From Vitrella brassicaformis CCMP3155 (Eukaryota > Protista > Chromerida), in assembly GCA_001179505.1 (NCBI GenBank), contig CDMY01000646.1, forward strand, positions 1-63,969: a DNA stretch of 63,969 nucleotides, read 5' to 3'. The first letter of the stretch is position 1, and every line of letters starts with the position of its first letter. Below, piece by piece: positions 1 through 62,999 of this stretch. The notes under the pieces are model-generated. The model was not told the DNA's origin and did no database searches. It worked only from the letters and a program-made list of their open reading frames with translations. Position numbers and translations under genes: made by a program.

Positions 1-616
1 GATGAAGACCCAATTGAGGCTCGGGGGGATGTGGGAGAGCGTGCCGGGGGGGCGAGAAGGACGCCAGAGGAAGAGCCAATAAGGCTGAGCGATATGATGA
101 GCTGCGGCGGGCAGCATCACGAGGAAAGGTCGGAGACGCCAACCACAGCCAAATGGGCACGGATGAGGACCGGACGAGGACCAACATGACCCCCAGAGGG
201 AGGGGAGCCGATGGCATCCTCAGCCAAAAGAAAACAAGGCTGAGGATGCCTCGAGAGATCTGCCTTGGGATCTGCGAGCTTGGATTCGCAGAAAGGGACG
301 CCTTGGTTGGTTGGTTATTGTGTTTAACGAGACTCGTGTCTGTAACCCCGAGGGGATCCTGTCCAGGTCACGCACTAAACTAGCAGCATGCACATGCATA
401 GAAGCATGCACACGGCCTGTCTCCCCATCCCACCCACCCACCCACTCGACACGCACGTGCCACCCTATGATGGTCAGAAAAATCGCTGTCGACACCGGTT
501 GCCTTGTGGTCGGGGGATAGCGAAAGGGAAGACCAGTTGCTCTAACTCAGATAAGCTCGCAGACCTTTGAGCTCGCACCAAATGGCCGCTGAATGCATGT
601 CCTCTCTGTCTGCTGG

Positions 617-9705: not shown

Positions 9706-10344
9706 ATAGTTTATTACTCTTGGCCTTTTGTCTTACGCTCATGGTGTCTTGTTGCGACTGCTGGTGGAGAGGGCGCCGCCGTCAGTAGCCGCATCATCGT
9801 CTGGTTGGTCCTGCAGCAGTGGCAGCGGATATCCTTCCGAGGCAAAGGAGGCAGGTGGGACGCTGCCAGCGGCCGCAGCGGCAGCTGCAGCTGTAGTATA
9901 GACCCTTCTCTCACACTCATGCCATCGGCGTCGTCAGAGGCGGCAGCAGACGACATATTTGTTGCCAGCGGGCCAGTGAGGGAGGGGGAGGGGATGAAGG
10001 ACAGGCGGATGCGTCAGCAAGGCCGGTGGGGGTGAAGAGCAGGGAGCGTCTGGTACGCCAGTCTGAGGCACGGCGCCGATCCACTGATTCACAGTCGCTT
10101 CAAACTCCTCCTCGCTCTACAGGGTGCACACAACAACACACCATTGCCATTAGGCCGGGTGTATACACACACATCCGTCTCTAACCGTCATTCCATCGGG
10201 GTTGTCGGTGCCTGCTGAAGCAGCGGCAGCAGAAGCAGCAGCAGCAGCAGCAGGGGACTCACCAGCTGCTGCGGGAGGGTTCTGACCAGACAATAAAGAG
10301 GTGAGAATCTCAGACCGTGACGGATCTCTTGTTGTGCATCCCTC

Positions 10345-11620
10345 TCATTTTCTGCCCTGTTGGCACCGTCTTCTGAAGTTTGTGATCCATTTGTCGGTGG
10401 CCGGGAAGCCAAGTTCCATCGCCTTTGCCCGGATGTCTCTCGGGCGGACGGTCATTGGGTCACGGCCGGCCATCCACCGCCGCATCGGATCCTCAATCTG
10501 CGGGTACTTGGGCTGTCTGTTGCACTTCTTGTTCGGATCGATAATCTGCTTGCCGTCCTTCCTTTCCTTCTTGATGGTATGGTACCACTGCCTGAATTGC
10601 TCATACTTGAGGCCCTTCTCCTTGGCGAACTTCCGCATGCTGATCTGCTCGCCGGATTTTTGACGTGAAATGAACTCGTCCACCAGCCGCTGCCGCTTGC
10701 CGATAGTGATCTCCGGTGCCCTCTCAGTGGACAACTGCAGGACACACAAACAAAGAGAGGCTATGTGACGGGCAGTGAGTGAATGGATTGCTGGGAGGAT
10801 TCAGAGTCTTACGTCAGGGGCATCTCCCGCAGTGGGCGCCAGCTGGGGAATTTGGTAGGGCGGGTAGCCATGGTGGGGGTGAGGATACTGACTACACACA
10901 AGAGTACGATCACATCAACGAGTGGGCCTCTCTTGTTCGTTCTCTCACCTGAGGTGTCTGCTGATGCATGGAGGGGCTCGCTGTGGGGTGGCCGGGATGG
11001 TCATTGTCTCCAAAGAGGCAAGGCAGGCCATCGGCTGGCTCGTCTAGTAGGCTCACATGTCCCGATGCCTGACTCCCACCGAAGCACTCAGCGTCCCCTA
11101 CAGCCACCAGACAATCGACGGTTGCATCTTCGCCTGCACGGCAATCGGAGCGCCTTGCGTGTCCGCTTACCTGATGCGTATCCGTCGGCTGCAGGGTCAC
11201 TTCGTGATTGCGGCTCTCTGGGATGCGACTGAGTCCCCCATCCGCCAGCGGCACTCCCAGACACATAGCCGGGTGGCTGCAGCAAACACACACACACAGA
11301 GAAAGAGAGAGAGAGGTCAAGTGATGCGATCCAAGGACTGCCGAGTATGCCCACCTGATAAGAGCCGTAGTAAGGAGCTGCAGCTGCGGCAGCGCAACCA
11401 CCATCTGCCACCTGTGAGAAAAGGGTAAGGAACAGAGTCACATCAGCACCACTGACTCCATCGCTGCACACACCTGTGTGTGAGTATCATCATCGTTATG
11501 CTCCTCGGCCGATTCGGTGGCATCCGTGGCCTGGAGAGAAGCACACAGCACATCAGCCAAAGATCTGTGTGTGGCGGCACAGGACGTCACCTGTGGGTGA
11601 GATCTGAACGAGTCGTCCAT
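10345..11620 (-). CDS. CENP-B/pogo-type tandem HTH DNA-binding protein, copy A (no DDE domain)
   Basis: Spliced low-complexity N-terminus from ATG 11620 (MDDSFRSHPQ). Last exon ITIGKRQRLVDEF...KFAKEKGLKYEQFRQW...RQPKYPQIEDPMRRWM...IRAKAMELGFPATDKWITNFRRR matches the psq-like plus Tc5-type HTH pattern. Confidence 0.75.
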
Positions 11621-14639: not shown

Positions 14640-15736
14640 TCACATTTTACTCACACCACAGCGAAGGCCCTGATCCAGTTGGGGCTCGCCGAGAAGCCAC
14701 TGACGCCGGACCCGGATGGCCTTCGGAGGGACGCTCATTGGATCAGCATGGTTGGCCATCCACTGCTGCATCACGTCCTCAATTTGGTGGTACTTCGGCT
14801 GTCTGTTGCGCTTCTTGTTTGTGTCGATGGCTTTCTTGCCCGGCGCCGGCTGCTTCTTCAGTTTGTGCCGCCACTGCTTGAACTGGCCAGGCTTGAGGCC
14901 CTTCTCTCGTTCGAACCGGGAAATGGTGATGCGCTCGCCGAACTTCTTCCGCCTTTCGAACTCCTCCACCAGCCGCAGCCGCTCGCCAATCGTCACCTCG
15001 CCGGCCCTCTCAGTGGGCACCTGCAAGACACACACACAAACACAGACAGCATTGGTGAGGCGACAGGCAGTGCGCGTATTTGGCAAGTGTGCATCACCTG
15101 CTGTGACGACTGGGGAGCCCTTCGTCTCGGTGAGTGCCGGAGTGGCGGGAGGGACTCTCCGCGATCTCGTGCGGACGGCTCAGGCGGCGGCCACATGACA
15201 TTGGGATGCATTTGGTAGGGCGGGAAGCCATAGTGAGTACGAGGATACTGACCACACACATGAGAGGACAATCACATCAACGAGTGGGCCTCTTTCCTTC
15301 GTTCTCTCACCTGAGGTGTCTGCTGCTGCATGGAGGGGTCGGCGATGGGGTGGCCGCTTGAATGGTGGCCTCCGCCATAGGGCAGATAAGAAACTGCCAG
15401 AGCACCGGCGTGTCGCTCCCATACATCATCTGTGGAACCACACAGTGCGTGATATCAGCCGTTCAGCTCACATGCGTGTCCATCGCGGCTCACTGTGATG
15501 CGACTGCTGAGTCATCCATTCACCAGCCGCACTCGCATCAAAATCACCTGGCACCTGCGAGGAAAGAGAAAGGAACAGATTCGCATCAGCACCACTGACT
15601 CCATCGCTGCACACACCTGTGTGTGAGTGTCATTGAAATGATGCCAGCGGTAATGATGCTCCTCGGCTCCCGTGGGATCATCATGAAATTCGCAGTCCCA
15701 CATTCCCTGTGGGCCAGATCTGCCTGAATCATCCAT
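14640..15736 (-). pseudogene. CENP-B/pogo-type HTH gene, copy C, frameshifted in the second HTH
   Basis: ATG 15736 (MDDSGRSGPQ); HTH exon paralogous to A and B. A 26-nt deletion relative to copy B near 14708-14714 moves GVSGFSASPNWIRAF out of frame. Confidence 0.6.
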
Positions 15737-16145
15737 CAGATGGCCTCCTTCAGGAAGGCCCTCCTTCCTTCGGCAGCCCTTTCAGGACAGCCTGAAGAGT
15801 CACACAGACATCAGCCAGATCAGCCAACTGGTGTGTGGCGGCAAGGCGCATCACCTGGTGGTCAGATCTGCTTGAGTCCAGTCCTCCATCACTCTCAGAA
15901 GGTGATGTGATCGTTTCTTTTTTCTGTTTTGTTTCTGAGAGGACCAGCGATTTCCTCAATGCGAGCGGTTTCACGGAGAGATTCCTCTCCAGGCTCTCTA
16001 ACCCTAACCCTACTCCTACGCCTGCTACGTCTCCTGCTCTCTCCATTCTCCACGCGGCGTCTGCCCTTGCCTCTTTGCGCTCTGCCCTTTTCCAAAGATC
16101 TCCACGAGTTTCCCTTATTCCTTCGTCGCAACGGTCCCCAACACC

Positions 16146-18286
16146 ATGATGGGTATGTCCTTCCAAGAACTATGGCGACGGGGCATCCGAGGCTTCTCGG
16201 ACAGCACAGCGGACGATGGAGATAGCGATACGCGGTGCGTTGATGCAATGAGTGTGCACACACGCACGAATCTTATGCGTGTGTGGTCTGTGTCTTTGTG
16301 TGTGGTCTATTCCTGTGTGTGGTCTATTCCTGTGTGTGTCTGTTGGTCAGATCAACTAACGAGAACACGGAGAACACAGCCCACAACTTCAAGACCAAGC
16401 TCTGCCAAAAGTGGCTGCGTGGGGCACTCTGCGAGCGAGGCGATCGCTGTCCGTTCGCTCACGGACGGCAGGATTTGCGGCAGCGCATACCGGAGTGGTG
16501 CAAGTTCCACAAACAAGGTACGCCACAGAACGCCACGTTGGCCACACCTCATTCGCTGAAACCGACAGGCCAATGCCGCCATGGCGACGGTTGTCACGCC
16601 GCCCACACTCAGGAGGAACTCGACTACTTGCGGTATGGCAGAGACGAATGGTCGATAACTTCACGATACAATCCACTTGTGCACTTGGTTTGCAGGGACC
16701 ATCCTGAGGTATGTCGGCCTCCACAAGGAACCAGGTGAGATTGGCATCGGTGTGAGGGATACAGCCACTGACCGCTGTGTGTGTCGTGCCTTGTTGCCGC
16801 GTGCAGGAGCTCTGCAAAGGACGACAGTCCGCCCAGACTCGACGGGGCCTCGGCGCCCAACGGTGAGCCACTGTGCATCCCTCGTGTCGGTGTGTGACTG
16901 ACGCCTCTGTGTGTGGTGTGTCCGCTGCGTTTCCCCTCTCTCTCTCTCTTTCTCTCTCCCTCTCTTTGTGTGTGTGTGGTCAGATCTCGGTAGTGGCAGC
17001 TGCTCTGGTCGGCCACAGCAGTTGCGCGGGAATGAGATCGAGACCACGTTCGACATGGAGTCATCGGTGAGATACCCATCCACACACACGCACACACACA
17101 CACACACACGGAACCGGCGGAGCACGTACACACGCGCCTCTCTGTGTGTGTGGTGTATGAGTTCAGGATGTGGCTGGTCTTTACATCGGCAAGGGCGGCT
17201 CGACCGTCACGGCCCTGCGCGATCGATGCGGCGGACGGGGTACGCACAGCACTGGAAGGCCGGATGAACCAAACATATGCACCTTGTGCTGTATGCGCTC
17301 GTGTGTTCAGATGTGATTGACATTGTCATCCCCCACCGAAACGACAACAGCACAATAATCAAAGTCAAAGGTCAGCCCATATAGATAGAGACACACAAAG
17401 GCCACGACAGGCACATGTCCCTTCTGTGTGATAACATTACAGGCCAGCCGGCTGCCGTAGCTAAGTGCCTCGAGGAGCTAGAGGCGATCAAGAAGCAATA
17501 CGAAGGGCGACTGCCTTCCGCTGGCACGCCGCCCCGCACAGCCACACCTACCGCACCCACACCCACGCCGGGGCGTGTGTCTCAACCACCTCTGAACGGA
17601 CCCCCAGCAACGACCATGAACAGGTACCATGACTGCCAGGCAGAGAGAGTGAGTAAGGTGAGTTATGTGTGTGTGTGTGTGCAGTCGAGGAGCTGCTGCC
17701 GTGATCATCGACTCGGCCTTCCTGGACAAAAGGCATGTTGCCCTCACGGGACGTTTCATGACGTCCGAGGGCTTCCAGTACCTAATCAGCTGCTTCGGCT
17801 ACAAATGGCCTCAGTATGAGATCACCCCCAACAGCACCTATGTGGTGAGCACACGGCCCGACGACATGAGCACCATGGCAGCCCAGAGAGCTCTCAAGAA
17901 CTTCCACAAGGGCATTGAACACATGGCCAAGATCCACGAGGCCCGGTATGGGAGATGCGACACACACATCATGGCGAGAGAACAGACGCACCTGCCCCCT
18001 CTTGTGTGTAGGGTGAAGTCAAATGGCAAGCAGAAGGGTGCTGACATCGCAATCGCTGACATGCTGAAAGACATGGCCGACGACCCCGAGATCGCAGCGG
18101 TGGTCTTCGTGGCTGGGGTATGTTGCACACATTCGTTTATCTATGGTCACCCGTGGTCATCTGTCATGCGATCGTTCTCCATTTCTCTTGCACTGAAGGA
18201 TGGCGACTTCGTGGAGACGCTGGAAAAGACTCAAGGTCAGAAGCCGGTCTTCTTGGTGACATCGGACGGGTCATACGAGTAAGTGT
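16146..18286 (+). CDS. Two CCCH zinc fingers + KH domain + NYN (LabA/DUF88-type PIN-like) ribonuclease; 3' end runs into a gap
   Basis: FKTKLCQKWLRGALCERGDRCPFAHG and WCKFHKQG|QCRHGDGCHAAH; spliced KH DVAGLYIGKGGSTVTALRDRCGG...IIKVKG|QPAAVAKCLEEL; NYN VIIDSAFLD...KQKGADIAI...VFVAG|DGDF. The last seen donor at 18279 leads into the N gap. Confidence 0.8.
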
Positions 18287-18586
18287 NNNNNNNNNNNNNN
18301 NNNNNNNNNNNNNNNNNNNNNNNNNNNNNNNNNNNNNNNNNNNNNNNNNNNNNNNNNNNNNNNNNNNNNNNNNNNNNNNNNNNNNNNNNNNNNNNNNNNN
18401 NNNNNNNNNNNNNNNNNNNNNNNNNNNNNNNNNNNNNNNNNNNNNNNNNNNNNNNNNNNNNNNNNNNNNNNNNNNNNNNNNNNNNNNNNNNNNNNNNNNN
18501 NNNNNNNNNNNNNNNNNNNNNNNNNNNNNNNNNNNNNNNNNNNNNNNNNNNNNNNNNNNNNNNNNNNNNNNNNNNNNNNNNNNNNN
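18287..18586. other. Assembly gap (300 N) followed by a G run
   Basis: Run of N. Confidence 0.99.
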
Positions 18587-18654
18587 GGGGGGGGGGGGAG
18601 GGCGGACGTGACACACCCGGACCGCCATTGATACAATGTGACTGTCTGTAATTT

Positions 18655-19150
18655 GTATGAGTCGTGTCTTTATCATTACATCTGTCGCTTTATCATTACA
18701 TCTGTCGCTTGCTTCATCACATCGTCCTGTCCATGCAATCGCTGCCTTGTGTAGCGTGGTATGTGTTCGGTGAGAGAGGGAGGAGTACGCGCGTGCCGCG
18801 ATGACGTCTAGCGACTGACTGACTGACTGAGTGACTGATTGGTGATGTGTATGTGTGCGTCGTCAATGTGTGTTGTCGTCGACTGACGGCCGCATTGGCT
18901 CACTTCACTTCAGAGAGAGGCCGATAGCGGGCAGCCCCGAGAGATATCGATCGGTACGAAACTGTGAGTGGAGTGTGGTTACGTTTTCAATCGGTGTTGC
19001 GTGCTGTGTGCCGAAGAGTCAGGCCATCTTTCGATTCAGAAAGGCAGTGAAAAACAAGGAAGTACAAAACAAAGTCAGATGAGAAAGAAATATAGAAAAG
19101 GAAGGGATGAAAGGTAGGAAGAAAAGAAGAGAAAAGATCAAGTAAAAAGA
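18655..19150 (+). repeat. Second copy of the 13800-14230 flank
   Basis: Direct visual alignment to 13800-14230. Confidence 0.9.
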
Positions 19151-20050
19151 ATGCGTGCTTGGCTGTGACCAGCACCCGATGTTCATCAACGACTCCCTGC
19201 CCAGGGATTTCTTCCTCTTATGCATTTGTGCTCTTGCTGTGGTTGGCTGTTCGTGTATCTGTTGTGGGTGCGTGCGGGTGTGCGTACGTGTGTGTGTGTG
19301 CGCATCGGACTGCATGGACACGGTAGCTCACGTAAGAGCACGCTTCATACAAACTGACGTCAGTTGCGTTCCTCTCCGTCTATTCAAGTGGCGCGAACAG
19401 CTTGCCCGGATATTGTGGTGACAATTTGAAAATGACATCACTCTCGACGAGTCACATTCATTTAGTCATGGACGCATGTCATAATACGCTCAACACACCC
19501 TGACACACACGTGGATGTACCAGATGGGGAGAGATGTGATAAGTGTGTGTGCGTGCGTCCAGCCCCCATCTGCTGCACTTCCCCAAAGTACCACAGATGT
19601 GACGCATGGATGGCAACATGATACGGACTGTACAACAGTGTACAACAGCATGAGAAATGACAGCAGACAGCGCAGACACAAAGAAGAGAAGAGAAGAGAA
19701 GATGCAGCCAATCAACCATACAACCGTAAAATCACAGTAATGCTGCGCCAATACAAACGACCTCAGCCCCAATCCGCACAACCAATAGCCCGATAGACAC
19801 AACAGCGAGCCATGGCATCAATCAATAAAAGCCACATTAAGACCAGTATGTGTGATACGGCATACATACATATATACATGCATCCATATCGGCTGGATGA
19901 ACGCAACACACACACACACCATCAAAGCATGTCATGTCGACATTTCTCACACCACAGTCAGCCTCCAGACTCGCCTCCGTTAGCCATGATGTCTCCGAAG
20001 CACAGCAGACACATTCGGCAAACAAGTGACATCATATACTCGAATTACAC

Positions 20051-22964
20051 CTACCCCGCCTTCGTTTCCCCCACCACGGCAAGCACGTCAACTTCATCAG
20101 CCATGAAGTACTTGCTACCCTCGAACACAGCACAGCCACGCTCATCCCTCACTCCTTCATAGCCCACAGGCACATGACCGCTCGGGATGCAATGACGGCA
20201 GCTGCGCATATCAGCAGCAGGGCCATAGCCGAAACCCAGCCAGCACGGCAGTCTCACACATCCATGCACATTTGAGCGTACAGCAGAGAAGAGAGAAGAC
20301 AATGCGACAGCAACGAAGAGGGGCTCGACACAGGACAGATGGTGAATTCACAAGTTTGCCACAAGTTTCACACACTTTCTTCCGAGGCAACATACAGAAA
20401 GTCACGGGAGGGCAGATGTCATAGCTTCCTGCTCACAGCAGCATAAACACGGAACACTACGCCAAACACCAACGACACACCGCCCCCTGCAAAAATACGG
20501 GCAGAACACCCAGTAGCAAAGTAAATGGCACAGACAGCTACTGCATTCCACAAGAAAATGCAAGAGAAGGCATCGACGTAGTGAGCGTCAAGCCACCGAT
20601 GCACCGGATCAAAAAAGCAGAAAAATGACATACAGCTCGCCATATCATCAGATGCCATCACTCTGAAGCAGAGTAAGGTCATGAACCCGCAGACGAGCGC
20701 TACCATCGGCCACAATACAAGCAATGTCAGTATTCCAGGCATTTCGTGTGGCTCCCACAGCCCCTCCCTAAACATCTTGACTGTCGGTATAATGCAATCA
20801 GTTAGCACCACCGCGCCTGCTATCAGCATCAGCAAGCAAAACCCCAGACGGCCCGAAAGGTGCGTCACATGTGACGAGGCTGATAACACGCCGTCCACGT
20901 GAATCACCTCCACTTCATCAGCCATTAGCACCTTACTGCCACCGAACAGAGCATTACCGCGGTCATCCCTCGGCCCCACATAGCCCTCGGGCGCATAAAA
21001 GCTGGAAATGCACTGCGAGTGTTGGCTGCGGATGAACTGCTGGCAGCTCCGCAGATCGTCCGTAGGGCCACTCCGATAGCAGCCATATCCCAACCACAGA
21101 CCCCCACACCCACCGATTCTGAGCTTTGCTCTCATTCCGAAGCCCGCTCCTTCCCTTCCGGCCACACACACTTGCTGTCTGCACTGCATCATCTTGGCCG
21201 GCTTGTCCGAGGGGCTGGGGAGGGAAAAATGCCACACAATCGTCTCGTACTTCTTCTTGCCTGTTGGAGTCTCCGGCAGCTTGATGCCATCCGCCATACA
21301 GGCCCCAAAGACATACTCGTCCTTCCTGATGACGAACACCAGGCCCTTGGCGTCGTCGACACATCGCAGCAGATCGGCGTAGCGACAGCCATCACGCGTC
21401 GCTCTGCAGTACGTGAAACAGAATGTCACATGAGGAAAGCAACAGATGGCAAACGCACCTGTAGACAAGACTTAGACTGCACTCTGTCGCCGGTCTGAGA
21501 AACTGGTGGAGTGCGCCGCATTGGAAGGGACTCAAACTGCAGCCATCGATAGCCTGCAGCCGATAGAGGTACATCAAACACATGAAAGCAACACTGATGC
21601 ACTCAGTTTTTTGCTGTGGGTGTGTGACCTTAAGCGGTGGGAGTGAGCGTCCATCAACATGAATAACCTCCAGTTCGTCAGCCGTAAGTACTTTCCAGCC
21701 AGCGAATAGAAGGAACTGTGGATCGCCCAGCTTCAAGCTGCGCTTTATACAGCAGCGGCGCATATTAGCTGCGTGGCCACGCCCACCATAACCCATAGAC
21801 AGAGACCGATTCATCAAGCCAATCATCGGCTCAGCTGTCCCCCAAGATCCTGTCCTCTTCTGCCCAGCCACACAAACGTCCTGCAACATTCGGGGGACTG
21901 GGATCTTGGTCGGTTCATCGAAGTATAGACCGGCAAGGGAGAAACACCACGAACTGCAGACGTAGTGGTTGACTCCTGCTGGATTCTCAGGCAGCTTGAT
22001 TCGGTCACTTATTCTGCCGCCGACAACACAGTCACCATCCCTGACGATGAACACCAGGCCCCTCGCATCGCCGACACACCGAAGGAAATCACTGTACAAT
22101 GGCCCGTCACGCGATGCCCTGGCAGACAAACGCACCCAAATGTCACTATCAATGTGTCCTATCAACGTGTCCCATCGTACGTCGTACCTGTAGAGCAGAG
22201 TGAATTCGCACTCGTCGTATTCGGACGGCACGACAAGAGACCGGAGGGCCGCACACTCAGCCGCACTCAGACTGCTGCCTTCGACCAGCTGGACATAGAA
22301 GGAGAGGCAAACAAGATCCGATTGCACGTGTCCATGATCGTATGCCGGTACTTGCCTGTATTGGCTCAGTCGCATCGCCATTCACTCCATCTACGGTGCT
22401 GCAGGCCGGTTGGACTGTCACGGTATCACCAGCCGCAGTCTGACAGCTGCCGACGATGGCCTGCAGGCAACACAGAACAGGCACACAGACAAAGATACGG
22501 CCACCAATTGACACTGCGTTGGCGAGTGGGTGTCGCATACGTGTGGTTGCTTGGCTGATCCTGTTTGTTGCGAGCATTGTGTATGAGGCCCCAGTCCCAG
22601 ACCGCCTTGCGGTGTTTCGTCGTCAGGCATATCAATCACGTAGTCAACATCCTGACGAGAGCGAACATAGAGAGGGACGAGATCAGGCTTATATGGCCAA
22701 CTGGTGCTCTCTCCCTTTGTGTTCTGACCTCTAGTGTGTCGGTCAGGCGCTCTTCGGCAGTGTTGGCGACGACAGACCTGGCCGACGAACGAGGTAGCTG
22801 CACGCATACACCAGACTATAAGCTGCCTGCGTGTCAGCGTGTGATCATTTCCTTAAAGGCCTCACCAGAGACGGCGGACCCTCCCGGTGGTCACGACCCT
22901 CAGGCTTGTGGATCTTGGTCGGTGGCCCTCTCTGGTTGGTCAGTCTCTCCACAAACGGCTCCAT
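20051..22964 (-). CDS. Multi-TLDc protein (two full and one partial TLDc) with an inserted multi-pass TM segment
   Basis: First exon MEPFVERLTNQRGPPTKI is paralogous to the exon at 8915. TLDc motifs YR|ASRDG...ADELEVIHV and YR|ATRDG...ADEVEVIHV; hydrophobic helices at about 20430-20850; half-domain ...FMADEVDVLAV at 20051-20270. Confidence 0.65.
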
Positions 22965-23084: not shown

Positions 23085-25570
23085 CCGTCATCAGCAGCCG
23101 ATTCGTCGTCTGCTTGGCCCTGCTGGGGCGGATATCCTTCCGAGGCAAAGGAGGCAGGTGGGACGCTGCTAGCGGCCGAAGCGACAGCTGCAGCTGCAGC
23201 ATGTGTATCTGGCTCCGGCTGGCCAGTGAGGGGAATGGGGAGGGGAAGGAGAGGGCCCGCAGCGGCTGACGGGCCGCCGAACGTGTCAATCAGCTGGCGG
23301 CCAGGCAATATCATACCCTTCTCTCACACTCGTGCCATCGGCGTCGTCAGGGACGGCAGCAGACGACATATGTGGCTGTGGCTGGTGAGTGAGGGTAAGG
23401 GCAAGGGGGAGATGATGGGGGTGAGGCGGACTTATTTCGGGCAAGGGTGAAGAGCAGGGAGCGTCTGGTACGCCAGTCTGAGGCACGGCGCCGATCCACT
23501 GATTCACAGTCGCTTCAAACTCCTCCTCGCTCTACAGGGTGCACACAACAACACACCATCATCGCTGGGTCTGATGAATGCGTTCATATTCGTCTCTTAC
23601 GGTCATTCCATCGGTGTTGTCGATGCCAGAAGCAGCAGCAGCAGCAGCTGCTGCTGCTGCGGGGAGCTCAGGGGCTGTGGGACGGTGCTGCCCAGACAAT
23701 AAGAGAGTGAGAATGTGAGACAATGGCGGATCTCTTGTTGTGCCTGCCTGCCTGTCATCTTTCTGACCTGTTGGAAGCGTTCTCTGAAACCCCTGACCCA
23801 GCTATCGCTCGCCGAGAAGCCACTGACGCCCAGCCGCATCTTGATCTCCATCGCTTTTTCTCTGATGTCCTTTGTGGGAACACTCATTGGGTCACGCTGC
23901 CCAGCCATCCACTGCCGCATCTCATCCTCGATCGGCTGGTACTTAGGTTGCCTGATGCGCTTCTTGTCTGCATCGGTCACTTGCACACCGACCTCCCTCT
24001 GCTTCATTAGCTTGTAGCGCCACTGCCTGAATTGGCCATACTTGATGCCGTTCTCCTTGGCGAACTGGGCCATGCTGATCCGCTCGCCGGACTGCTTCCG
24101 CCTCTCAAACTCCTCCACCAGCCGCAGCCGCTCGCCGATAGTGGTCTCCGGCGCCCTCTCAGTGGACACCTTCATGACACAGAAACAAAGAGAGGCTATG
24201 TGACGGGCAGTGCGTGAATGGAGTGGTGGGAGGAATCAGAGTCATACGTTAGGGGCATCTCCCGCAGTGGGCGCCAGCTGGGGAATTTGGTACGGCGGGA
24301 AGCCATAGTGAGTGTGAGGATACTGCGCAGACACAGAAGAGGACAATCACATCAACGAGTGTGCCTTTCTCGTTCGTTCTCTCACCTGAGGTGTCTGCTG
24401 ATGCATGGAGGGGTCGGCGATGGGGTGGCTGGCACGGTCGTCGTCTCCAAAGAGCCATTGCAGGCCGTCGAGTGGGTCGTCTGGTGGGCTGACATGTGCC
24501 AATGGCTGACTCCCACCAAAGCACTCAGCGTCCCCTACAGCCACCATGCAATCGACGGTTGCATCTTCGCCTGCACGGCAATCGGAGCGTCTTGCGTGTC
24601 CGCTCACTTGATGCGTATCCGTCGGCTGCAGGGTCACTTCCTGATTGCGGCTCTCTGGGATGCGACTGAGTCCCCCATCCACCAGCGGCACTCCCAGACA
24701 CATAGCCGGGTGGCTGCAGCCAACACACACACACGGAGAAAGAGAGAGAGAGGTCAAGTGATGCGATCCAAGGACTGCCGAGTATGCCCACCTGATAAGA
24801 GCCGTAGTAAGGAGCTGCAGCTGCGGCAGCGCAACCACCATCTGCCACCTGTGAGAAAAGGGTAAGGAACAGAGTCACATCAGCACCACTGACTCCATCG
24901 CTGCATACACCTGTGTGTGAGTGTCATCACAATTATGCTCCTCGGCCAATTCGGTGGCTCCCGCAGCCTGGAAAAAAGCACAAACAGGCACATCAGCCAG
25001 CAGCCAAAGATCTGTGTGTGTGTCGGCAAAGGACGTCACCTGTGGGTGAGATCTGAACGAGTCGTCCATCAGAAGGCCTCCTTTGGGCAGATCTCCGGAA
25101 AAGGACCTCAGATGAGGACGCCTTGGTTGGTTGGTTATTGTATTTCGAGACTCGTGTCTGTAACCCCGAGGGGATCCTGTCCAGGTCACGCACTAAACTA
25201 GCAGCATGCACATGCATAGAAGCATGCACACGGCCTGTCTCCCCATCCCACCCACCCACCCAGTCGACACGCACGTGCCACCCTATGATGGTCAGAAAAA
25301 TCGCTGTCGACACCGGTTGCCTTGTGCTCGGGGAATAGCGAAGGGAAGACCAGTTGCTCTAACTCAGATAAGCTCGCAGACCTTTGAGCTCGCACCAAAT
25401 GGCCGTCGCAGGCATGTCCTCTCTGTCTGCTGGTGTGCTGTGCTGTGTGTGTGTGCAGATCTCTTCGTCAAGGGCAAGATCTCGGCGGTGACTGTCACTG
25501 TGACTCATTCGGTGTCGTTATGGGGACGTCGTGGAGATATGCTCCTTTCTGGCGTCGTTATGGGAGGGCC
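23085..25570. repeat. Segmental duplicate of about 9780-11870 (low-complexity piece + HTH gene + promoter)
   Basis: Long near-identical blocks, e.g. 23447-23560 vs 10033-10145 and 24590-24920 vs 11150-11480. Confidence 0.95.
23603..25069 (-). CDS. CENP-B/pogo-type tandem HTH protein, copy B (no DDE domain)
   Basis: ATG 25069 (MDDSFRSHPQ). Last exon TIGERLRLVEEF...RQPKYQPIEDEMRQWM...IREKAMEIKMRLGVSGFSASDSWVRGFRERF. Confidence 0.75.
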
Positions 25571-26480
25571 GGCTTGGTATACTGCTCACGGTATTCCTAC
25601 AGCTCGTCAGGCTCTGCTGTTCCGCCGTTGTCAGCGCACCGCCATGAACGGTGAGGTATCCACGTTCACTTTCGCACGCCCCTCCCACACACACTGGCTG
25701 AGATCTGCCACTTGTGTTGATTTGCAGCCGGTCTGACTCCTGGGTGGCGAGCGTTCCTTCTACGTGGCCTTCATGACCACTGGGACGATGTCGAGCTCGA
25801 TCGCCAGCGCTCTCAGTCGCTGGCGGACCCGACGGACGTGACAGCGCCACCGAAGCATCGCCAGGTGTGGCTCACCGCGGCGAGTGCCGAGCGCATCACG
25901 GGTCAGCAGGGGTGGCAGCTGGCGCTCCTTCCGGCGGCCATCGACCAGGACGCCCGGGACCGGCCCCTCCGCCACCTGTTCCGGCTGCAGGCCTTCCGCA
26001 AACCGGATATGAACCTGACCGAGCAGTCGGCTCATCAGGACGGCCAGTGCTGCGTCCTCGTGTACTGGGGAGGGGAGCTGGTGGATGAGGTGCGTTACGT
26101 GCCGGTCGACAAGGGTTCGGATGAGAAGCTGTGTGCGACGTGTGTGGTGCCGTGTGCTGATGGCACCGGCGGCATCTGCGGCAAGCAGAACACCTTCCGC
26201 AACGTCGTCAACTCGCACCTGCGCAAGACACACAAACTGACCAACGAGGATGCGCAGGTATGTGTGTGAGGACATGTCTTCTGCGCATGGACGGCCTCGT
26301 GTATGCTGTGTTGTCCTGCGTGGTGTCTGCAGCGGCTTCTTGCCTCTCTTGGGCTATCGGCGCCGATGACTGTCACCAACACACGTACGATGCGACGCGG
26401 TGCGGGGGATGGACTGAATGTGCTGTCTGTCCATCCACCGTGTCTGTCTTTCTGCAGATGTGTACCACCACCATGGGTCG
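25117..26480 (+). repeat. Segmental duplicate of about 297-1680 (promoter + BED gene 5' exons)
   Basis: Direct alignment with scattered substitutions. Confidence 0.95.
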
Positions 26481-27098
26481 CTGCAAGGTCAGGGAGCAGC
26501 CGACGAATATGCAGCAGGTGAGTGGGCAGAGATGCCTGCATGGGCAAGGGTGTAATGGTCGACTGTGTGCCTGCTATAGGTGACGCTGGGTGGTCCGGTG
26601 TGAGTCATCCACCAATGGCTGCGGGCCAGCCGATTATATTTGCCGGCTCGGTGATCTATCAGTCCAGCCACGTCCCCGCTGCTGAGACACCGACCACCGA
26701 CGACGAGAGCGCACCGTGAGTCAGCACATACAACAGCGTGCACATGGCATATGGCAGTTTGTGTATGTGTGTATGCAGGCCACCACTGGGTCTTCTGCGG
26801 GTCGACGACATGGATATGGCGCCTTCCAACAGTGACCTCAACGGAGGCATCGCTCCCTCCTATTTGCAAGGCCATGAGACGCTCCTCGGCCATGAAGTTG
26901 GGGGTTTGATGCAACAGGTGGGACATGACGGACGACACATTCGTGACAGACACGGCGCTGACAACGTCCGTGTGTCTGTTTTCTGTCTGTCGGGATGGAG
27001 ACTTTGAGGATCACAGCAAGTGGCCTGCCGATGAATGGGCCGACAGCCTGATTGGCACCCTGCTGGATCCTGATGGTGCTCTCATGCACCAGTACTGA
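25644..27098 (+). CDS. BED-like zinc-finger protein, copy 2 (open frame)
   Basis: MN|AGLTPGWRAFLLRG...CATCVVPCADGTGGICGKQNTFRNVVNSHLRKTH, then short exons to ...DEWADSLIGTLLDPDGALMHQY*. The 3' exons are unrelated to those of copy 1. Confidence 0.6.
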
Positions 27099-28154
27099 GT
27101 GCAACTTGCGTGCGTGTGTGGTGAGTGGATGTACGTGTGTACGTGTGTGTGTGTGTGTGCATGGATGGATGGATGGATTGACTGGATGCATGGCGACTCA
27201 TTGAATGTATGGGCTGGACTGATTGGCACGCGCACGAAGACAGTCAAATCATCTCCTTCCATACACCATCGGCACGGAAGCGATTGCATGTCCCCCTTCC
27301 CTCCAGCCAAACACTACAGACAGACATACAAAAAATGCACACGAAGAATGGGTAGTACCAAAAACACTGTCAGTGTAAGATGTCATCACAGCCAAAATGG
27401 CCACATATGCATATCAACATGAGGGAAAAATACAACCATAAATGCCCCACGCACACCTCACACCATCTCTCTCTCCTGTAAGCAAGGCTTTTTCTCTCTC
27501 TCTCCTCCGCTTCTCCGCTTCTCTGCTTTTTCGATCGCTGCTGCCGACGAACGACATGTTGTAATGCTTCACAAGTGCACACATACACGCGCACAAAAGA
27601 AGAAGGCTTGCTCGCGGCTGAATTGGCTGTCGTGTTGTTGTCTGCATCGATTGATTAGGCCCTGGCTGCATTGCATTGCATAGATACTATTGGTATAATG
27701 CTTGTGCTGTCTGTCGTGTCAGTGCCGCTGCGAAGTAGCAGCAAAAAGAGGTGTTTGCCGTGGTGTGACGTGGTATGCGGTGTGTATATGTATATCTATC
27801 GTATCAATGCTTCCCACAATCCATCTGCAAGGCCTTGAGGACATTCACACGCACGCATTCACACATGTTGGTCAACACAGGGTGCAGCAGGCCACAACAG
27901 GACGACAGAAAAATAGTGGCATCTACACAGGTCAAATGTCCATACGACAAATAGCTACATCGAAGTCCATTCCCCTCCACCAAGCCGGCAAATACATGAA
28001 AAGCAAAAATAACCGTGCTGCTGGTGAAGGGGGGGAAGAATACCTATACACACCCTTGGCATTTTACTCATATACATACATACAATCCCTCACACCCACC
28101 CCTTTCCTCTCTCAGATTAATCAAACATCGATCGTCACTGTCTTCGTCATCATC

Positions 28155-30435
28155 TCAGTCCTCGTTCATACTACTGTCATCATCACTCTCGCTCTCGCTC
28201 TCGCTCTCGTCCTCTTCAATCTCAGGCACGGCAAAGCGGTCCGCCATCGAGACGAACTCACCCGCCTCATCGACAAAGCCCAGCCCGTCCCACTCGAAGT
28301 CACAATCCCCATCGCCGAGGTGCTGAAAGCCCTTGACCACGCCCCTCGGGTCGTGCTCCGTCGCTTCGTCAAGCCGTGCCCTGTGGACCACCTCTCGAAG
28401 ACCCAGCAGCCGATGCTGCCCACCCTCCTCTCCCCGTATTGCGAAGCACTGCAGTGGTGGGGCATGGACCGTCTGGCCTTGCTCCTCGTGCCTCCCACCG
28501 ACCACCTCTGTGTTGCCGCTGGCGTGAAAGACAGCAGAGGCGACGAAGTGGTCCATTGCCGTGTGGATGCGATGGCCGAGTTTGCTGTGGGACCGCAATT
28601 GGATCGCGTTGACGGTCTCATGGGCGGCGGCGGTATCGAAGCACAATGCCGCAATGTGCCAGGCGATCGCCGCTGCCTCTTGTGGGCCGAAATGGAGGAG
28701 GGAGGGGACGGGATCATCAGGGGGGCCGTCATTGTGAGGCGCGAGGGGCAGCAGATCGGTGAGCAGAGCGGCCAGCTCACGTTGGGGCCTCAAGGCAGCA
28801 TTGACCGTGTTCATGAGCTCATGACGGATACGGTTGAGGACGCGCACATACTCACGCTTGATCACCTGGCGCTCACGGTTAGCTCCGCTGAGTGCTGGAT
28901 CGCCTTTCCTGGTGGTAGCGATGGGGGCAGCTGGTAGAGGAACGCCGGCACGCAACAGCAGTCGGATCCTCTCCTTGGCCGCCTCTGCCCTCCTCTTGTA
29001 GCATTTCTCGAATTCCTTGCATTCAATGCTCGATCGCACTTGACGAGCAAGCTCTTGAGCACACTCAGCCTCACCACTGAAATAGCGCATCAGCTCAGGG
29101 CCTCTCCTCACGAGGACACTCGCCGGCAGACGCTTGCACAGGAACTCCAGTAACCAGGGCTCATGGGCGCCTTCTGCCTGGTCGATCGGCCTCAGTCCAT
29201 TACCCTCTTTGCTGTTGATTGGGGAGCCGAACTCATACAAGAGCTCACAGAAACCAACTGAAAAGTCAACCACACGTTCAATCAGTAACAGTGCTACGTG
29301 TATGTGTCATTCGCCGGCTCACTTGTGAAGTTCCTGGTGAACGACGCATGCTCAGCCACTGAGTGAATGGGCAGCTCTTTGTCACAAAGCTCCTCGGTCG
29401 CCAGACTGCTGTCGTGCTCCAGTAGCCGGCGGATGCAGGGGAGAAGAACGTCGAAGTACTGCTCGTAGACGTCCTCTGGCGGGCAAGGCTTCTGATCCTT
29501 CCCATCTATATCCCAATCATCACCGAAGAAGAGGATGGCGGGGGGAACAGAGGGAGGCTTCCCTCTACTGCCGCCCTTCTGTTCGAACGAGAGACGAACG
29601 ACACAGGTGCATGGGTGGAGTTGGCATCTGTGTTTTGGTGTGTTCACCGATCGTTTGCCGCTCTTCTTGCTAGGAATGCGGGACTGGCTGAGAAGGGTGT
29701 CGAGGGCAGGGAGGTTCGCTTTGTGGAAGGCCGCCTTAATCAACTCGTCGCCTCCACGTGCTCCCCCGGCAAGCAAGGCTTGGAGGACCTCCCTTTGTTG
29801 CTCGGGAGATGGCCACAGGGGCAGAATAAGTGGAAGTCCAACCTTTTCCATCCTCCTTGTATGTCCCCAGTTGAGGCCAGGACATCCACCTAAAGGCAGA
29901 CAACGAGGCAACCAACACAAGGTACGTGACACATGTGATGTAACTGCCTTGTTGGCTTGCCTGTCGGGTCGTCAATTGCCAACTGAAGCACACCCAACTC
30001 CTCCCATGTGGAACGAGGCCATCTGTCCCACCAAGGGCGGTGGTTGGGCCGCTTCATGCCGCTGAGCCTCACTGTCAGCTTCGCATCCGCCCCCTTCTCG
30101 ATGAGCCTCGACACGCCACGCCCCGTGATGTTGCGCCGCAGAATCCGACAAACCAATCGCTCGCTGGCCTCATTCGTGTCGGCGGGGAAGCTGATGCCCA
30201 CCGAGCGGTCGTTGAGTACCACTTGACGCTCGTCATCAACAGCACCAGCCTCTGATGAGTTGCTGCTTGGCGCGCCCGCATCCCCTTCCAAAAAGTTCTC
30301 GACAGAAAGACGGTACCGAAGCCTCTTCCGTTTGCCTTCTTCGTCGGGCGGGAAGTCAGCGATACGCTTGCGAGGGGGAGGTCGCTCGTGCGGGGGAGGC
30401 GCTGGCACGTCCCGGCCGCTCCTCGTGTGCACCAT
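28155..30435 (-). CDS. Lineage-expanded ankyrin-like hypothetical protein
   Basis: Three coding segments (29890-30435, 29294-29932, 28155-29273) with LIEKGAD and LPLWPSPEQQREVLQALLAGGA motifs and C-terminal PPLQCFAI...LGLREVVHRARLDEA...FEWDGLG, a pattern I recall from a large Vitrella family. Confidence 0.7.
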
Positions 30436-30637
30436 GACGGATCCAACAGATGCGATGAATCAGAGAGAGCGATGGATCAGTCTCTGCCGAATAGGGAAGC
30501 GACGCAGAGACGCACAACACTGACCACAGCACATCCCACACTGCGAGCTCAGCTCGCGATCTTGAGCAGGAAGATCTCCACCAAATGTGTCCATCGTGTG
30601 GCCATTTCCAGGCTCTGCATATGGATGCTGAGAGATC

Positions 30638-62425: not shown

Positions 62426-62884
62426 TGGCAGTTAACTCAGCTCTCCACAGTTGACAATCTTGTCCACGCTGACACTCGAAGGAATGAGCTTGGCAGAGGA
62501 CCGGGACTCTAAGGAAGCGGCAGTAGGAGAGCAATGAATCAGTCGCTTGCCGAGAGATCTTGATCTTGGTCAGAAGAGCCTCTCCCATGGGTCGTGAGGC
62601 CTCGTTGAGGAGAGATCTTGAGAATCACGACGCCGACAGACGCCGATCGGCATCTGCGCGCTTGGCTCGCAGTCGACAGGGCTGATTGTTGCTTTGGTGG
62701 CTCAGAGGGCGCTCATTTTTCTACTTCCCCCTTCTGGCTTCTGTACACTTGCCATGGCTCTTGCTGGGCGACAGCGCCCGTTCTTGTGTATGTAGCCGGA
62801 ATCGGTGTTTGTCAACGTTCTACAAGGCAGCCAGTGCTCTCTGTTGCCATCTGTTTGTCCGCCGGTGCCAGTGCAGGGCGGGGT

Positions 62885-62999
62885 AGACAGGCCGTGTGCA
62901 TGCTTTGCATGTACATGCTGCTAGTTTAGTGCGTGAGACAACAGGATCCCTCCGGGGTTACAGACACGAGTCTCGTTAAACACACTAACCAACCAACCA
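62885..62999 (-). repeat. Inverted copy of a 115-bp module also at 304-422 and 25124-25240
   Basis: Its reverse complement matches TGGTTGGTTGGTT..TGTGTTTAACGAGACTCGTGTCTGTAACCCC...CACGCACTAAACTAGCAGCATG...CACGGCCTGTCT. Confidence 0.9.

What the first reader, a model, noticed from the sequence alone, without database searches (positions are those of the whole stretch)
16146..18286. CCCH-CCCH-KH-NYN protein: RNA sensing and RNase in one chain
Seen: only after manual splicing do a TTP-like CCCH pair, a KH domain with GKGG loop split over four exons and an NYN domain with its four acidic motif residues appear in one frame. Known: animal ZAP (CCCH) recruits KHNYN (KH + PIN-like nuclease), and MARF1 uses a LabA-type NYN against retrotransposon RNA. 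Inference: a convergent single-polypeptide RNA-surveillance nuclease, within about 12 kb of an ART gene and a deaminase gene.
Basis: partly seen in the sequence, partly recalled or inferred. Interest (0 to 1): 0.75.

Follow-up and report, generated by a model that had tools for sequence, protein, structure and literature searches.

The report
Zinc-finger, KH and NYN nuclease gene
This is a real spliced gene of the alga Vitrella brassicaformis that puts two RNA-binding zinc fingers, a KH domain and a MARF1/LabA-type NYN nuclease domain in one reading frame. It is already in public databases but unstudied, it probably cuts RNA, and no transcript yet shows the full-length protein being made.

Summary
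Twelve GT-AG exons (16146-18278, + strand) keep one frame. From the third ATG on, they equal the public 417-aa model CEM27946.1 (P0007) of Vitrella brassicaformis CCMP3155. On P0007, zf-CCCH (36.2 bits), KH_1 (29.9) and NYN PF01936 (25.7) all pass Pfam's cut-offs. Its predicted NYN domain matches LabA-type 2qip (Z 14.7) and MARF1 NYN (Z 13.3). All four catalytic-position aspartates are present.

The gene ends in a short 13th exon inside the N gap, so no further domain is missing. It is one of two paralogous copies (91% identical; the other lies on contig C260). It belongs to a CCCH-NYN family that my searches found only in Vitrella.

The scan has already flagged this architecture on other DNA (s1-197165, probably the C260 copy).

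Caveats:
- Every public transcript or ORF is the C260 copy, and none is the window's copy.
- Those transcripts put the CCCH, KH and NYN exons on one mRNA. However, they retain intron 2 or use an alternative acceptor, and either breaks the full-length frame.
- Joining an RNA-binding module to a NYN nuclease in one chain is well known (Regnase-1, KHNYN/N4BP1, MARF1). The resemblance to ZAP-KHNYN is an analogy.
- The ART and deaminase neighbours are not conserved at the paralogous locus.

Verdict: a new domain combination of a known kind, of modest interest.

The parts
16146..16234 (+). Exon 1. An out-of-frame ATG lies further down the exon; its counterpart in the C260 copy starts the MMETSP ORF P0001.
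16351..16517 (+). Exon 2: FKTKLC lead-in, CCCH finger 1 (16403-16462) and the first Cys of finger 2.
   Evidence: Pfam zf-CCCH 4.9e-9 on the exon alone. The CCCH frame has the fewest amino-acid changes against copy A: 3 from 8 nt differences, against 6 in the other frames.
16518..16568 (+). Intron 2: 51 nt, a multiple of 3 and stop-free in this copy. It lies inside finger 2. Its counterpart in copy A (62 nt, with a stop) is retained in assembled transcripts.
   Evidence: P0009
16569..16632 (+). Exon 3: the rest of CCCH finger 2 (finger spans 16499-16606). An alternative acceptor AG at 16611-16612 gives a short exon starting at 16613, 44 nt shorter and therefore a frameshift.
   Evidence: 1 amino-acid change from 5 nt differences against copy A
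16696..16734 (+). Exon 4 (linker).
   Evidence: splice confirmed on copy A cDNA
16807..16862 (+). Exon 5 (linker; 3-nt indel against copy A).
16984..17066 (+). Exon 6: linker and first beta strand of KH.
17167..17239 (+). Exon 7: KH helices with the GKGG loop (17188-17199).
   Evidence: KH_1 0.0044 on the exon alone; 29.9 bits on P0007
17311..17370 (+). Exon 8: KH beta strands.
17443..17623 (+). Exon 9: C-terminal KH helix (the KH Pfam match ends at 17483), then a Pro/Thr-rich linker.
17685..17945 (+). Exon 10: N-terminal half of the NYN domain; first catalytic-position Asp at 17710-17712 (IIDSA).
   Evidence: Collinear matches in paralogs; alignment A1; fold
18012..18117 (+). Exon 11: NYN middle part; second Asp at 18043-18045 (GADIA).
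18199..18278 (+). Exon 12: NYN GDGDF motif (Asp at 18199-18201 and 18205-18207) and the next strand. The exon ends in phase 2 before donor GTAAGT at 18279. The public model instead stops at TAA 18280-18282.
18287..18586 (.). N gap. By homology with copy A it hides the rest of intron 12, the short last exon 13 (about 20 codons to a TGA) and the first part of the 3' UTR.
18587..19333 (+). Probable 3' UTR, 74-89% similar to the 3' UTR of the copy A cDNA. The RNA-like run X1 has exact contigs at 18855-19074 and 19215-19368, which could also belong to the convergent downstream gene.

Best explanation
A genuine nuclear protein-coding gene of Vitrella brassicaformis. It is one of two diverged paralogous copies. 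Its product joins a tandem CCCH zinc-finger pair and a type-I KH domain, both single-stranded-RNA binders, to a C-terminal LabA/MARF1-type NYN (PIN-like) domain with a complete four-aspartate metal site. The most likely mechanism is that the fingers and KH select RNA targets and the NYN domain cuts them as a Mg2+/Mn2+-dependent endoribonuclease. That would make it a sequence-directed mRNA decay or regulation factor, working like Regnase-1, KHNYN/N4BP1 or MARF1. It belongs to a CCCH-NYN family found here only in Vitrella. Shown: exon structure, domain identities, fold, conserved aspartates, the paralog family, and one mRNA spanning all domains in the sister copy. Inferred: RNase activity, RNA targeting, and production of the full-length protein.
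For: Gene model: 11 GT-AG introns and an open frame, identical to public P0007. In copy A all splice sites are kept, exon indels are only 21 and 3 nt, and dN/dS is 0.46. The model frame has the fewest amino-acid changes in every exon, or ties for fewest. Ten introns plus intron 12 are spliced exactly as modelled in a copy A cDNA contig running from 5' UTR to 3' UTR. Domains: three Pfam families pass their cut-offs on P0007. A profile of the family hits TTP 1m9o (1.5e-9) and TIS11d 1rgo (6e-9) across both fingers, and 2qip at 2e-6. In the AF2 model of P0007 the NYN domain has pLDDT 77-94, with VIA Z 14.7 to 2qip and 13.3 to mouse MARF1 NYN, followed by FEN/PIN-like nucleases. The P0008 model gives Foldseek 2qip 6.3e-7, MARF1 TM 0.79 and hnRNP K KH3 at 3e-3. 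The four Asp positions are kept in all paralogs. They match the spacing of MARF1 Asp358/426-427/452, whose mutation abolishes RNase activity (PMC6294520).
Against: There is no RNA evidence for the window's own copy. All public ORFs and transcripts are 100% the C260 copy, and the RNA-like run X1 has no contig on the coding exons. No assembled transcript of either copy encodes the full fusion. The NYN Pfam score is only just over the cut-off (25.7 against 24.2). The KH and finger parts of the models have low confidence. The last exon of this copy is unseen, and a chimeric contig hints at a 1-nt deletion there. No biochemical data exist for any member of this family.
Confidence: 0.6

Rival explanations
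1. The window's copy is a silent or decaying duplicate of the expressed C260 gene. It would still be readable as an ORF but no longer make a functional protein.
For: All seven cluster members with transcript origin match copy A at 100% and the window's protein at only about 93%. X1 has no contig on 16091-17470. A contig piece 100% identical to window 17875-18286 continues into an exon 13 that is one A shorter than copy A's. That shift would replace the conserved last 19 residues with 4 residues and a stop.
Against: Twelve exons are intact with no stop and all splice sites are kept. Exon indels are multiples of 3 and dN/dS is 0.46, with derived changes on both copies. That contig piece is demonstrably chimeric and carries an artefact-like 184-nt tandem duplication, so the 1-nt difference may be an assembly error. 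X1 is small, and it does have exact contigs in the probable 3' UTR.
Confidence: 0.25
2. The gene mainly yields split or shortened products and not the full fusion. Processing of intron 2 and exon 3 would gate the outcome. One product would be a short peptide with finger 1 only; another would be a KH-NYN protein without working fingers. This could be unproductive splicing that limits a dangerous nuclease.
For: Transcript_18993 and the JGI cDNA L016 retain intron 2. Transcripts 47361 and 47362 use an acceptor 44 nt inside exon 3. The ORFs called on them are 86-87 aa (finger 1 only) and 279-402 aa (KH-NYN). The same alternative acceptor exists in the window (16611-12).
Against: The finger 2 frame is under constraint, with 1 amino-acid change from 5 nt differences in exon 3. 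Finger 2 is also conserved in the paralog P0013. The KH-NYN ORF in those isoforms starts from a downstream out-of-frame AUG. In the window's copy intron 2 is 51 nt and stop-free, so retention would not separate the parts. Instead it would insert 17 residues into finger 2. Short-read assemblies over-represent retained introns.
Confidence: 0.2
3. The NYN domain is not a nuclease here. It would act as an RNA-binding or protein-docking module, making the protein a plain RNA-binding regulator.
For: In 2017 a survey of the PIN-like superfamily found that no PF01936 (LabA-type NYN) member had been studied for nuclease function, LabA included (PMC5499597); MARF1's activity was shown only in 2018. The Pfam score here is marginal.
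Against: All four acidic positions are retained in this protein and in every paralog. The closest eukaryotic structural match, MARF1 NYN, is a proven endoribonuclease that depends on those residues.
Confidence: 0.12
4. It is a dedicated antiviral or anti-transposon RNA-surveillance effector working with the neighbouring ADP-ribosyltransferase and deaminase genes in a eukaryotic 'defence island'.
For: Both neighbours lie within about 12 kb (notes s1-199347 and s1-199348). The family is lineage-specific, expanded and fast-evolving. Scan notes list many other NYN fusions in this genome (unchecked).
Against: The paralogous locus keeps the gene and the flanking blocks but lacks the 4-kb deaminase segment. 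It matches only the 3' end of the ART gene. Gene order in eukaryotes rarely implies shared function. No virus, transposon or induction data were available.
Confidence: 0.07

Closest known systems
MARF1 (limkain b1) NYN endoribonuclease, animals
   Same: Same NYN subtype (Pfam PF01936, LabA-like). The predicted fold matches mouse MARF1 NYN at Z 13.3, rmsd 2.8 over 128 residues, and at TM 0.79. The four-Asp site has the same spacing. The nuclease is joined to RNA-binding modules in one chain.
   Different: MARF1 uses RRM and LOTUS/OST-HTH domains, and neither is detected here. Here the RNA-binding parts are two CCCH fingers and a KH domain. Sequence identity is 10-15%. This gene is not an ortholog.
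LabA / VPA0982 (PDB 2qip), bacterial LabA-like NYN proteins (COG1432)
   Same: The best sequence-profile match (2e-6) and the best structural match (Z 14.7). The GDGDF motif is identical.
   Different: These are single-domain bacterial proteins with no demonstrated nuclease role (PMC5499597). They have no fingers and no KH.
Regnase-1 / ZC3H12A (MCPIP1)
   Same: A PIN-like NYN RNase and a CCCH finger in one polypeptide, giving RNA-directed endonucleolytic mRNA decay. This is the nearest functional analogue for 'sensor and RNase in one chain'.
   Different: Its NYN is of the Zc3h12a type (a different Pfam family, not matched here). It has one finger placed C-terminal to the nuclease and no KH.
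KHNYN / N4BP1 (with ZAP)
   Same: KH-type module and NYN nuclease in one chain. ZAP supplies CCCH fingers in trans (PMC6615859, PMC11670115).
   Different: The KHNYN nuclease is Zc3h12a-type and its KH is an extended di-KH that may not bind RNA. The fingers sit on another protein. The resemblance is architectural only, and no homology of the nuclease subtype was found.
TTP / TIS11 tandem zinc-finger proteins
   Same: The profile aligns across both fingers with 1m9o (1.5e-9) and 1rgo (6e-9). Finger 1 has the FKTKLC lead-in and C-x8-C-x5-C-x3-H spacing.
   Different: The inter-finger linker is 12 aa, not 18. Finger 2 is C-x7 and has no lead-in. TTP recruits deadenylases and carries no nuclease of its own.
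Vitrella CCCH-NYN paralogs (CEM24643.1 = P0013, loci on C291, C718, C393) and the sister copy CEL98007.1 = P0008
   Same: The same NYN subfamily, with collinear exon 10-12 matches at E 1e-14 to 1e-5. P0013 and the C291 locus also carry CCCH fingers upstream, and P0013's second finger is nearly identical in sequence.
   Different: Only this gene and its C260 sister show a KH domain between the fingers and NYN within the loci I examined. Scan notes mention other KH-NYN genes elsewhere in the genome; I did not check them.

Membership tests
zf-CCCH (PF00642) | HMM score over the gathering cut-off; C-x7/8-C-x5-C-x3-H ligand spacing | tested here: met
   36.2 bits against 20.5 on P0007 for finger 1, and 4.9e-9 on exon 2 alone. 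Finger 2 has the C-x7-C-x5-C-x3-H pattern across intron 2. It aligns with finger 2 of TTP/TIS11d in the profile search but gives no separate Pfam stretch.
TTP/TIS11-type tandem zinc finger | Two C-x8-C-x5-C-x3-H fingers, each with a (R/K)YKTELC lead-in, separated by an 18-residue linker (my knowledge of the family) | tested here: not met
   Finger 1 fits (FKTKLC, C-x8). The linker is 12 residues, and finger 2 is C-x7 without a lead-in. The pair is related to TTP but is not a canonical member.
KH type I (PF00013) | HMM over the cut-off; GXXG loop; beta-alpha-alpha-beta-beta-alpha topology | tested here: met
   29.9 bits against 21.5. GKGG lies at residues 171-174. The model of P0008 shows E146-152, H155-162, H165-176, E182-186, E194-200 and H203-220. 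Foldseek hits hnRNP K KH3 and PCBP KH1 at E 3e-3 to 1e-2, TM 0.6-0.7. Model confidence is only moderate (pLDDT 42-67).
NYN, LabA-like (PF01936) | HMM over the cut-off | tested here: met
   25.7 bits against 24.2 on P0007, 28.4 on P0008, 30.1 on P0013. This is marginal for the window's protein. It is strengthened by the family profile against 2qip at 2e-6.
NYN, LabA-like (PF01936) | PIN-like alpha/beta fold closest to solved NYN domains | tested here: met
   P0007 model residues 265-417: 2qip Z 14.7 (135 aligned, rmsd 3.1) and MARF1 NYN 5yaa Z 13.3 (128 aligned, rmsd 2.8), followed by FEN/PIN-like nucleases at Z 10-11.
NYN, LabA-like (PF01936) | Four conserved acidic residues forming the metal site | tested here: met
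   D277, D366, D391 and D393 of P0007 are conserved in all Vitrella paralogs. They align to the D and GDGDF of 2qip. Their spacing matches MARF1 Asp358/426-427/452. Spatial clustering in the model was not measured.
NYN, LabA-like (PF01936) | Metal-dependent endoribonuclease activity | not testable with these tools
   Needs a recombinant protein assay.
KHNYN / N4BP1 / Regnase (RNase_Zc3h12a-type NYN) | Match to the Zc3h12a-type NYN family | tested here: not met
   No such family appears among Pfam hits at E <= 0.1 on P0007 or P0008. The best structural matches are LabA/MARF1, not MCPIP1.
MARF1 orthologs | NYN followed by RRM and LOTUS/OST-HTH repeats | tested here: not met
   No RRM or OST-HTH hit. 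The protein ends about 20 residues after exon 12.

The most novel reading that the evidence does not exclude
Vitrella has built its own lineage-specific set of RNA-guided NYN nucleases: the CCCH-NYN family, plus this pair with an added KH. The intron placed inside the second zinc finger would act as a switch. Canonical splicing would give a targeted nuclease, while retention or the alternative acceptor would give an untargeted, truncated or no product. That would make this a self-limiting RNA-level defence or transposon-control effector that evolved independently of animal ZAP-KHNYN and MARF1.
Probability: 0.1. Interest if true: 0.6.

Novelty: new variant of a known kind. Interest (0 to 1): 0.35.

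Why it matters
If the protein is made and active, it would be a compact natural example of a nuclease whose target choice is set by two different single-stranded-RNA readers (a tandem CCCH pair and a KH domain) on the same chain as a MARF1-type NYN domain. It would come from a free-living relative of apicomplexan parasites, where post-transcriptional control dominates gene regulation. It would also extend the recurring theme of an RNA-binding module joined to a PIN-like nuclease to a new domain combination and a new lineage.

The variable intron inside finger 2 offers a testable link between splicing and nuclease targeting. As it stands this is an unstudied member of a known class, and it answers no open question by itself.

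Tried and rejected
- **NYN exon by exon.** Pfam on exons 10, 11 and 12 separately, and a six-frame PF01936 scan of the genome, gave no NYN hit in the window. The domain is too finely split. This was resolved through the public protein P0007.
- **Exon 10 against PDB sequences and the ESM Atlas.** Only chance-level hits.
- **RNA evidence by read laying.** Three of the four runs turned out to be DNA. The one RNA-like run (X1) covers both neighbours but not the coding exons.
- **Relatives outside Vitrella.**
  - The exhaustive phmmer search with exon 10 gave only two real hits, both Vitrella.
  - Word-based searches with P0001, the NYN region of P0008 and the family profile returned only Vitrella NYN proteins plus two CCCH-only proteins.
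  - Those three word-based searches are limited in sensitivity and candidate length, so together these blanks are weak evidence of absence.
- **Haplotig hypothesis for the C260 copy.** Rejected. The flanks are only 75-86% identical, rearranged and partly absent.
- **Closing the gap with the C260 piece that is 100% identical to 17875-18286.** Only partly usable. That contig is chimeric: window type at first, then 100% copy A. It also carries a 184-nt tandem duplication.
- **UniProt entry A0A6U4H9C8 (P0001) as the 'true' protein.** Rejected. Its N-terminus is an out-of-frame reading of exon 2, caused by the alternative-acceptor isoform.
- **Joined spliced model.** Local scripts joined exons only to check the frame, to compare the two copies and to verify identity with P0007.
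Full report
**What is there**

The window comes from Vitrella brassicaformis CCMP3155. The assembly has 72.7 Mb in 1064 contigs, and the names of the matching public proteins confirm the organism.

- It has twelve exons and eleven introns, all GT..AG.
- One frame is kept throughout, with 420 codons and no stop.
- Exon 12 ends at 18278 in front of a consensus GTAAGT donor, so the gene runs into the N gap (18287-18586).

Exon by exon, only the first zinc finger (zf-CCCH, 4.9e-9) and a weak KH signal (0.0044) were visible. NYN was not detected at all, either in the exon scans or in a six-frame scan of the genome.

**A public protein equals the spliced model**

Instead I searched with exon 10 by reference, which led to a 90% cluster of seven proteins. 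One member, P0007 (CEM27946.1, UniProt A0A0G4GEV7, 417 aa, 'C3H1-type domain-containing protein'), is exactly the splice of 16155..18279. A script assertion verified this.

It stops at the TAA at 18280 only because the gap hid the next exon.

Pfam results on P0007:

| Family | Score (bits) | Cut-off (bits) |
|---|---|---|
| zf-CCCH | 36.2 | 20.5 |
| KH_1 | 29.9 | 21.5 |
| NYN (PF01936) | 25.7 | 24.2 |

The KH match spans exons 6 to 9, with GKGG at 17188-17199.

**The fingers**

- Finger 1 (16403-16462) has an FKTKLC lead-in and C-x8-C-x5-C-x3-H spacing.
- Finger 2 (16499-16606) is C-x7-C-x5-C-x3-H and is split by intron 2.
- The linker between them is 12 residues.

A profile of the family aligns over both fingers with TTP (1m9o, 1.5e-9) and TIS11d (1rgo, 6e-9). 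The pair is therefore TTP-related but does not meet the canonical TTP definition.

**The nuclease domain**

- A profile of the Vitrella NYN domains hits the LabA-like structure 2qip at 2e-6, with GDGDF aligned to GDGDF.
- In the AF2 model of the window's own protein, the NYN domain has pLDDT of about 77-94.
- That domain aligns with 2qip at Z 14.7 and with mouse MARF1 NYN at Z 13.3. FEN/PIN-like nucleases follow at Z 10-11.
- The sister protein's model gives the same answer, plus hnRNP K KH3 for the KH part.
- The four acidic positions (D277, D366, D391, D393) are kept in every paralog.
- They have the spacing of MARF1's Asp358, Asp426/427 and Asp452. MARF1 is a proven endoribonuclease that depends on those residues (PMC6294520).
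- There is no match to the Zc3h12a/KHNYN-type NYN family.

**The missing end**

Contig C260 carries a second copy of the gene (P0008, CEL98007.1, 431 aa). The two copies compare as follows:
- 91% nucleotide identity, and 374 of 422 aligned residues identical.
- All splice sites are kept.
- Exon indels are only 21 and 3 nt.
- dN/dS is 0.46.

In every exon the model frame has the fewest amino-acid changes, or ties for fewest. In particular, the CCCH frame of exons 2 and 3 shows 3 changes from 8 nt differences and 1 from 5.

In copy A, a 74-nt intron 12 is followed by a short exon 13 that adds about 20 residues and a TGA. A cDNA contig confirms this junction. No further domain is therefore hidden in the gap.

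A C260 contig piece that is 100% identical to window 17875-18286 continues into an exon 13 one A shorter than copy A's. Read as written, that would frameshift the last 19 residues. However, the piece is chimeric: after a 184-nt tandem duplication it becomes 100% copy A. I leave the state of the window's last exon open.

**Paralogs, not alleles**

The flanks of the two loci are only 75-86% identical and are rearranged. The 4-kb block that carries the deaminase gene is absent from the C260 locus, and only the 3' part of the ART gene has a counterpart there.

**Family**

Exon-by-exon tblastn finds collinear exon 10-11-12 matches at loci on C585, C718, C393 (two tandem copies) and C291. CCCH fingers lie upstream at C585 and C291, and none of these loci has KH.

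P0013 (C585) has four CCCH fingers plus NYN. P0014 (C393), by its precomputed Pfam annotation, has NYN only.

Outside Vitrella I found no relatives:
- The exhaustive exon 10 search gave only two real hits in 1.84 billion representatives.
- Three word-based searches returned only Vitrella NYN proteins.

These searches have limited reach. Full-text searches found no paper linking Vitrella with NYN, and none describing this domain combination.

**Transcripts**

All public transcript-derived ORFs in the cluster are 100% copy A.

The JGI cDNA contig L016 (2278 nt) runs 5' UTR, exon 1, exon 2, retained intron 2, exon 3 and on to exon 13, followed by more than 800 nt of 3' UTR. Every other intron is removed exactly as modelled.

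Intron 2, which sits inside finger 2, is processed variably:
- It is retained in L016 and in Transcript_18993. The ORFs called there are P0009 (87 aa) and P0010 (279 aa).
- It is removed with an acceptor 44 nt inside exon 3 in Transcripts 47361 and 47362. The ORFs called there are P0011 (86 aa) and P0001, whose N-terminus is an out-of-frame artefact.

No assembled transcript encodes the full fusion.

In the window's copy, intron 2 (51 nt) and intron 3 (63 nt) are both multiples of three and stop-free. Retention there would keep KH-NYN in frame and would only disrupt finger 2.

For the window's copy itself there is no coding-exon RNA evidence. Run X1 is RNA-like, since it shows spliced contigs of the upstream gene. 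It has no contig on 16091-17470, and only exact contigs in the probable 3' UTR, which might also belong to the convergent downstream gene.

**Interpretation**

The most likely function is an RNA-directed, metal-dependent endoribonuclease. The fingers and KH would choose single-stranded RNA targets and the NYN domain would cut them. It would work like Regnase-1 (NYN plus CCCH), KHNYN/N4BP1 (KH plus NYN) and above all MARF1 (the same NYN subtype). It is not a member of any of those families.

The surveillance or antiviral role and the link to the neighbouring genes remain unsupported.

**Relation to earlier scan notes**

Note s1-197165 describes the same architecture on another piece of this genome (probably the C260 copy), with the same caveat about an intron that breaks the frame. 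I reached the same conclusion independently for copy A. I add that the window's copy has no transcript support, a stop-free intron 2 and an unresolved last exon. Notes s1-201664, s1-201702 and s1-205542 describe related CCCH-NYN and KH-NYN genes. I checked only the family's existence.

Noticed in passing
G000:C260:122156-124848 (loci L002, L004, L005): Scaffold C260 is redundant around its N gap (123725-124024). The 3' end of the gene copy is assembled twice. The second time it appears as a chimeric contig: 412 nt of window type, a 184-nt tandem duplication of intron 12 plus exon 13, then 100% copy A. The public 153-aa model P0015 ('NYN domain-containing protein') is built on this artefact and reads through the duplicated intron.
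   Followed up: partly
window 10100-11529 and 23515-24963: Two copies of a roughly 1.4-kb element within the window. Both are 80-83% identical to C260 127243-128656, suggesting a repeated gene or element that flanks the nuclease gene at both loci.
   Followed up: no
window 25369-30526: Further blocks 82-86% identical to C260 133509-144793. The order and orientation differ from those around the nuclease gene, so these are old, rearranged segmental duplications between the two contigs.
   Followed up: no
window 1-280 and 62680-62974: Short stretches 97-99% identical to C260 119357-119635 and 120705-120999. These are near-identical repeats, or possibly shared assembly pieces.
   Followed up: no
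window 15500-15923 (- strand): The upstream gene is transcribed. An RNA-like contig of run X1 shows two introns, skipping 15552-15613 and 15791-15853 (CT..AC on the + strand, i.e. GT..AG on the - strand). It has an 80% identical counterpart next to the C260 copy.
   Followed up: no
window 20419-22381 (- strand): Two tandem, mutually similar long ORFs (349 and 329 aa), each ending in hydrophobic stretches. They are convergent with the nuclease gene. X1 has an unspliced 1129-nt contig at 19420-20548 covering the end of the first ORF and its 3' UTR. Domain identity was not tested.
   Followed up: no
UniProt A0A6U4H9C8 (P0001), copy A transcript: This public MMETSP-derived entry has an N-terminal 60 residues that are an out-of-frame reading of the zinc-finger exon. 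The cause is an alternative acceptor 44 nt inside exon 3, so the entry hides the CCCH fingers.
   Followed up: yes
window 17573-18188: DNA-run contigs (X3, X4, X6) differ from the window at many positions, including 1-nt and 9-nt deletions in intron 11. Each contig is a different mosaic of window-type and copy-A-type variants. The likely cause is graph assembly across two 91-95% identical copies; real recombinants seem less likely.
   Followed up: partly
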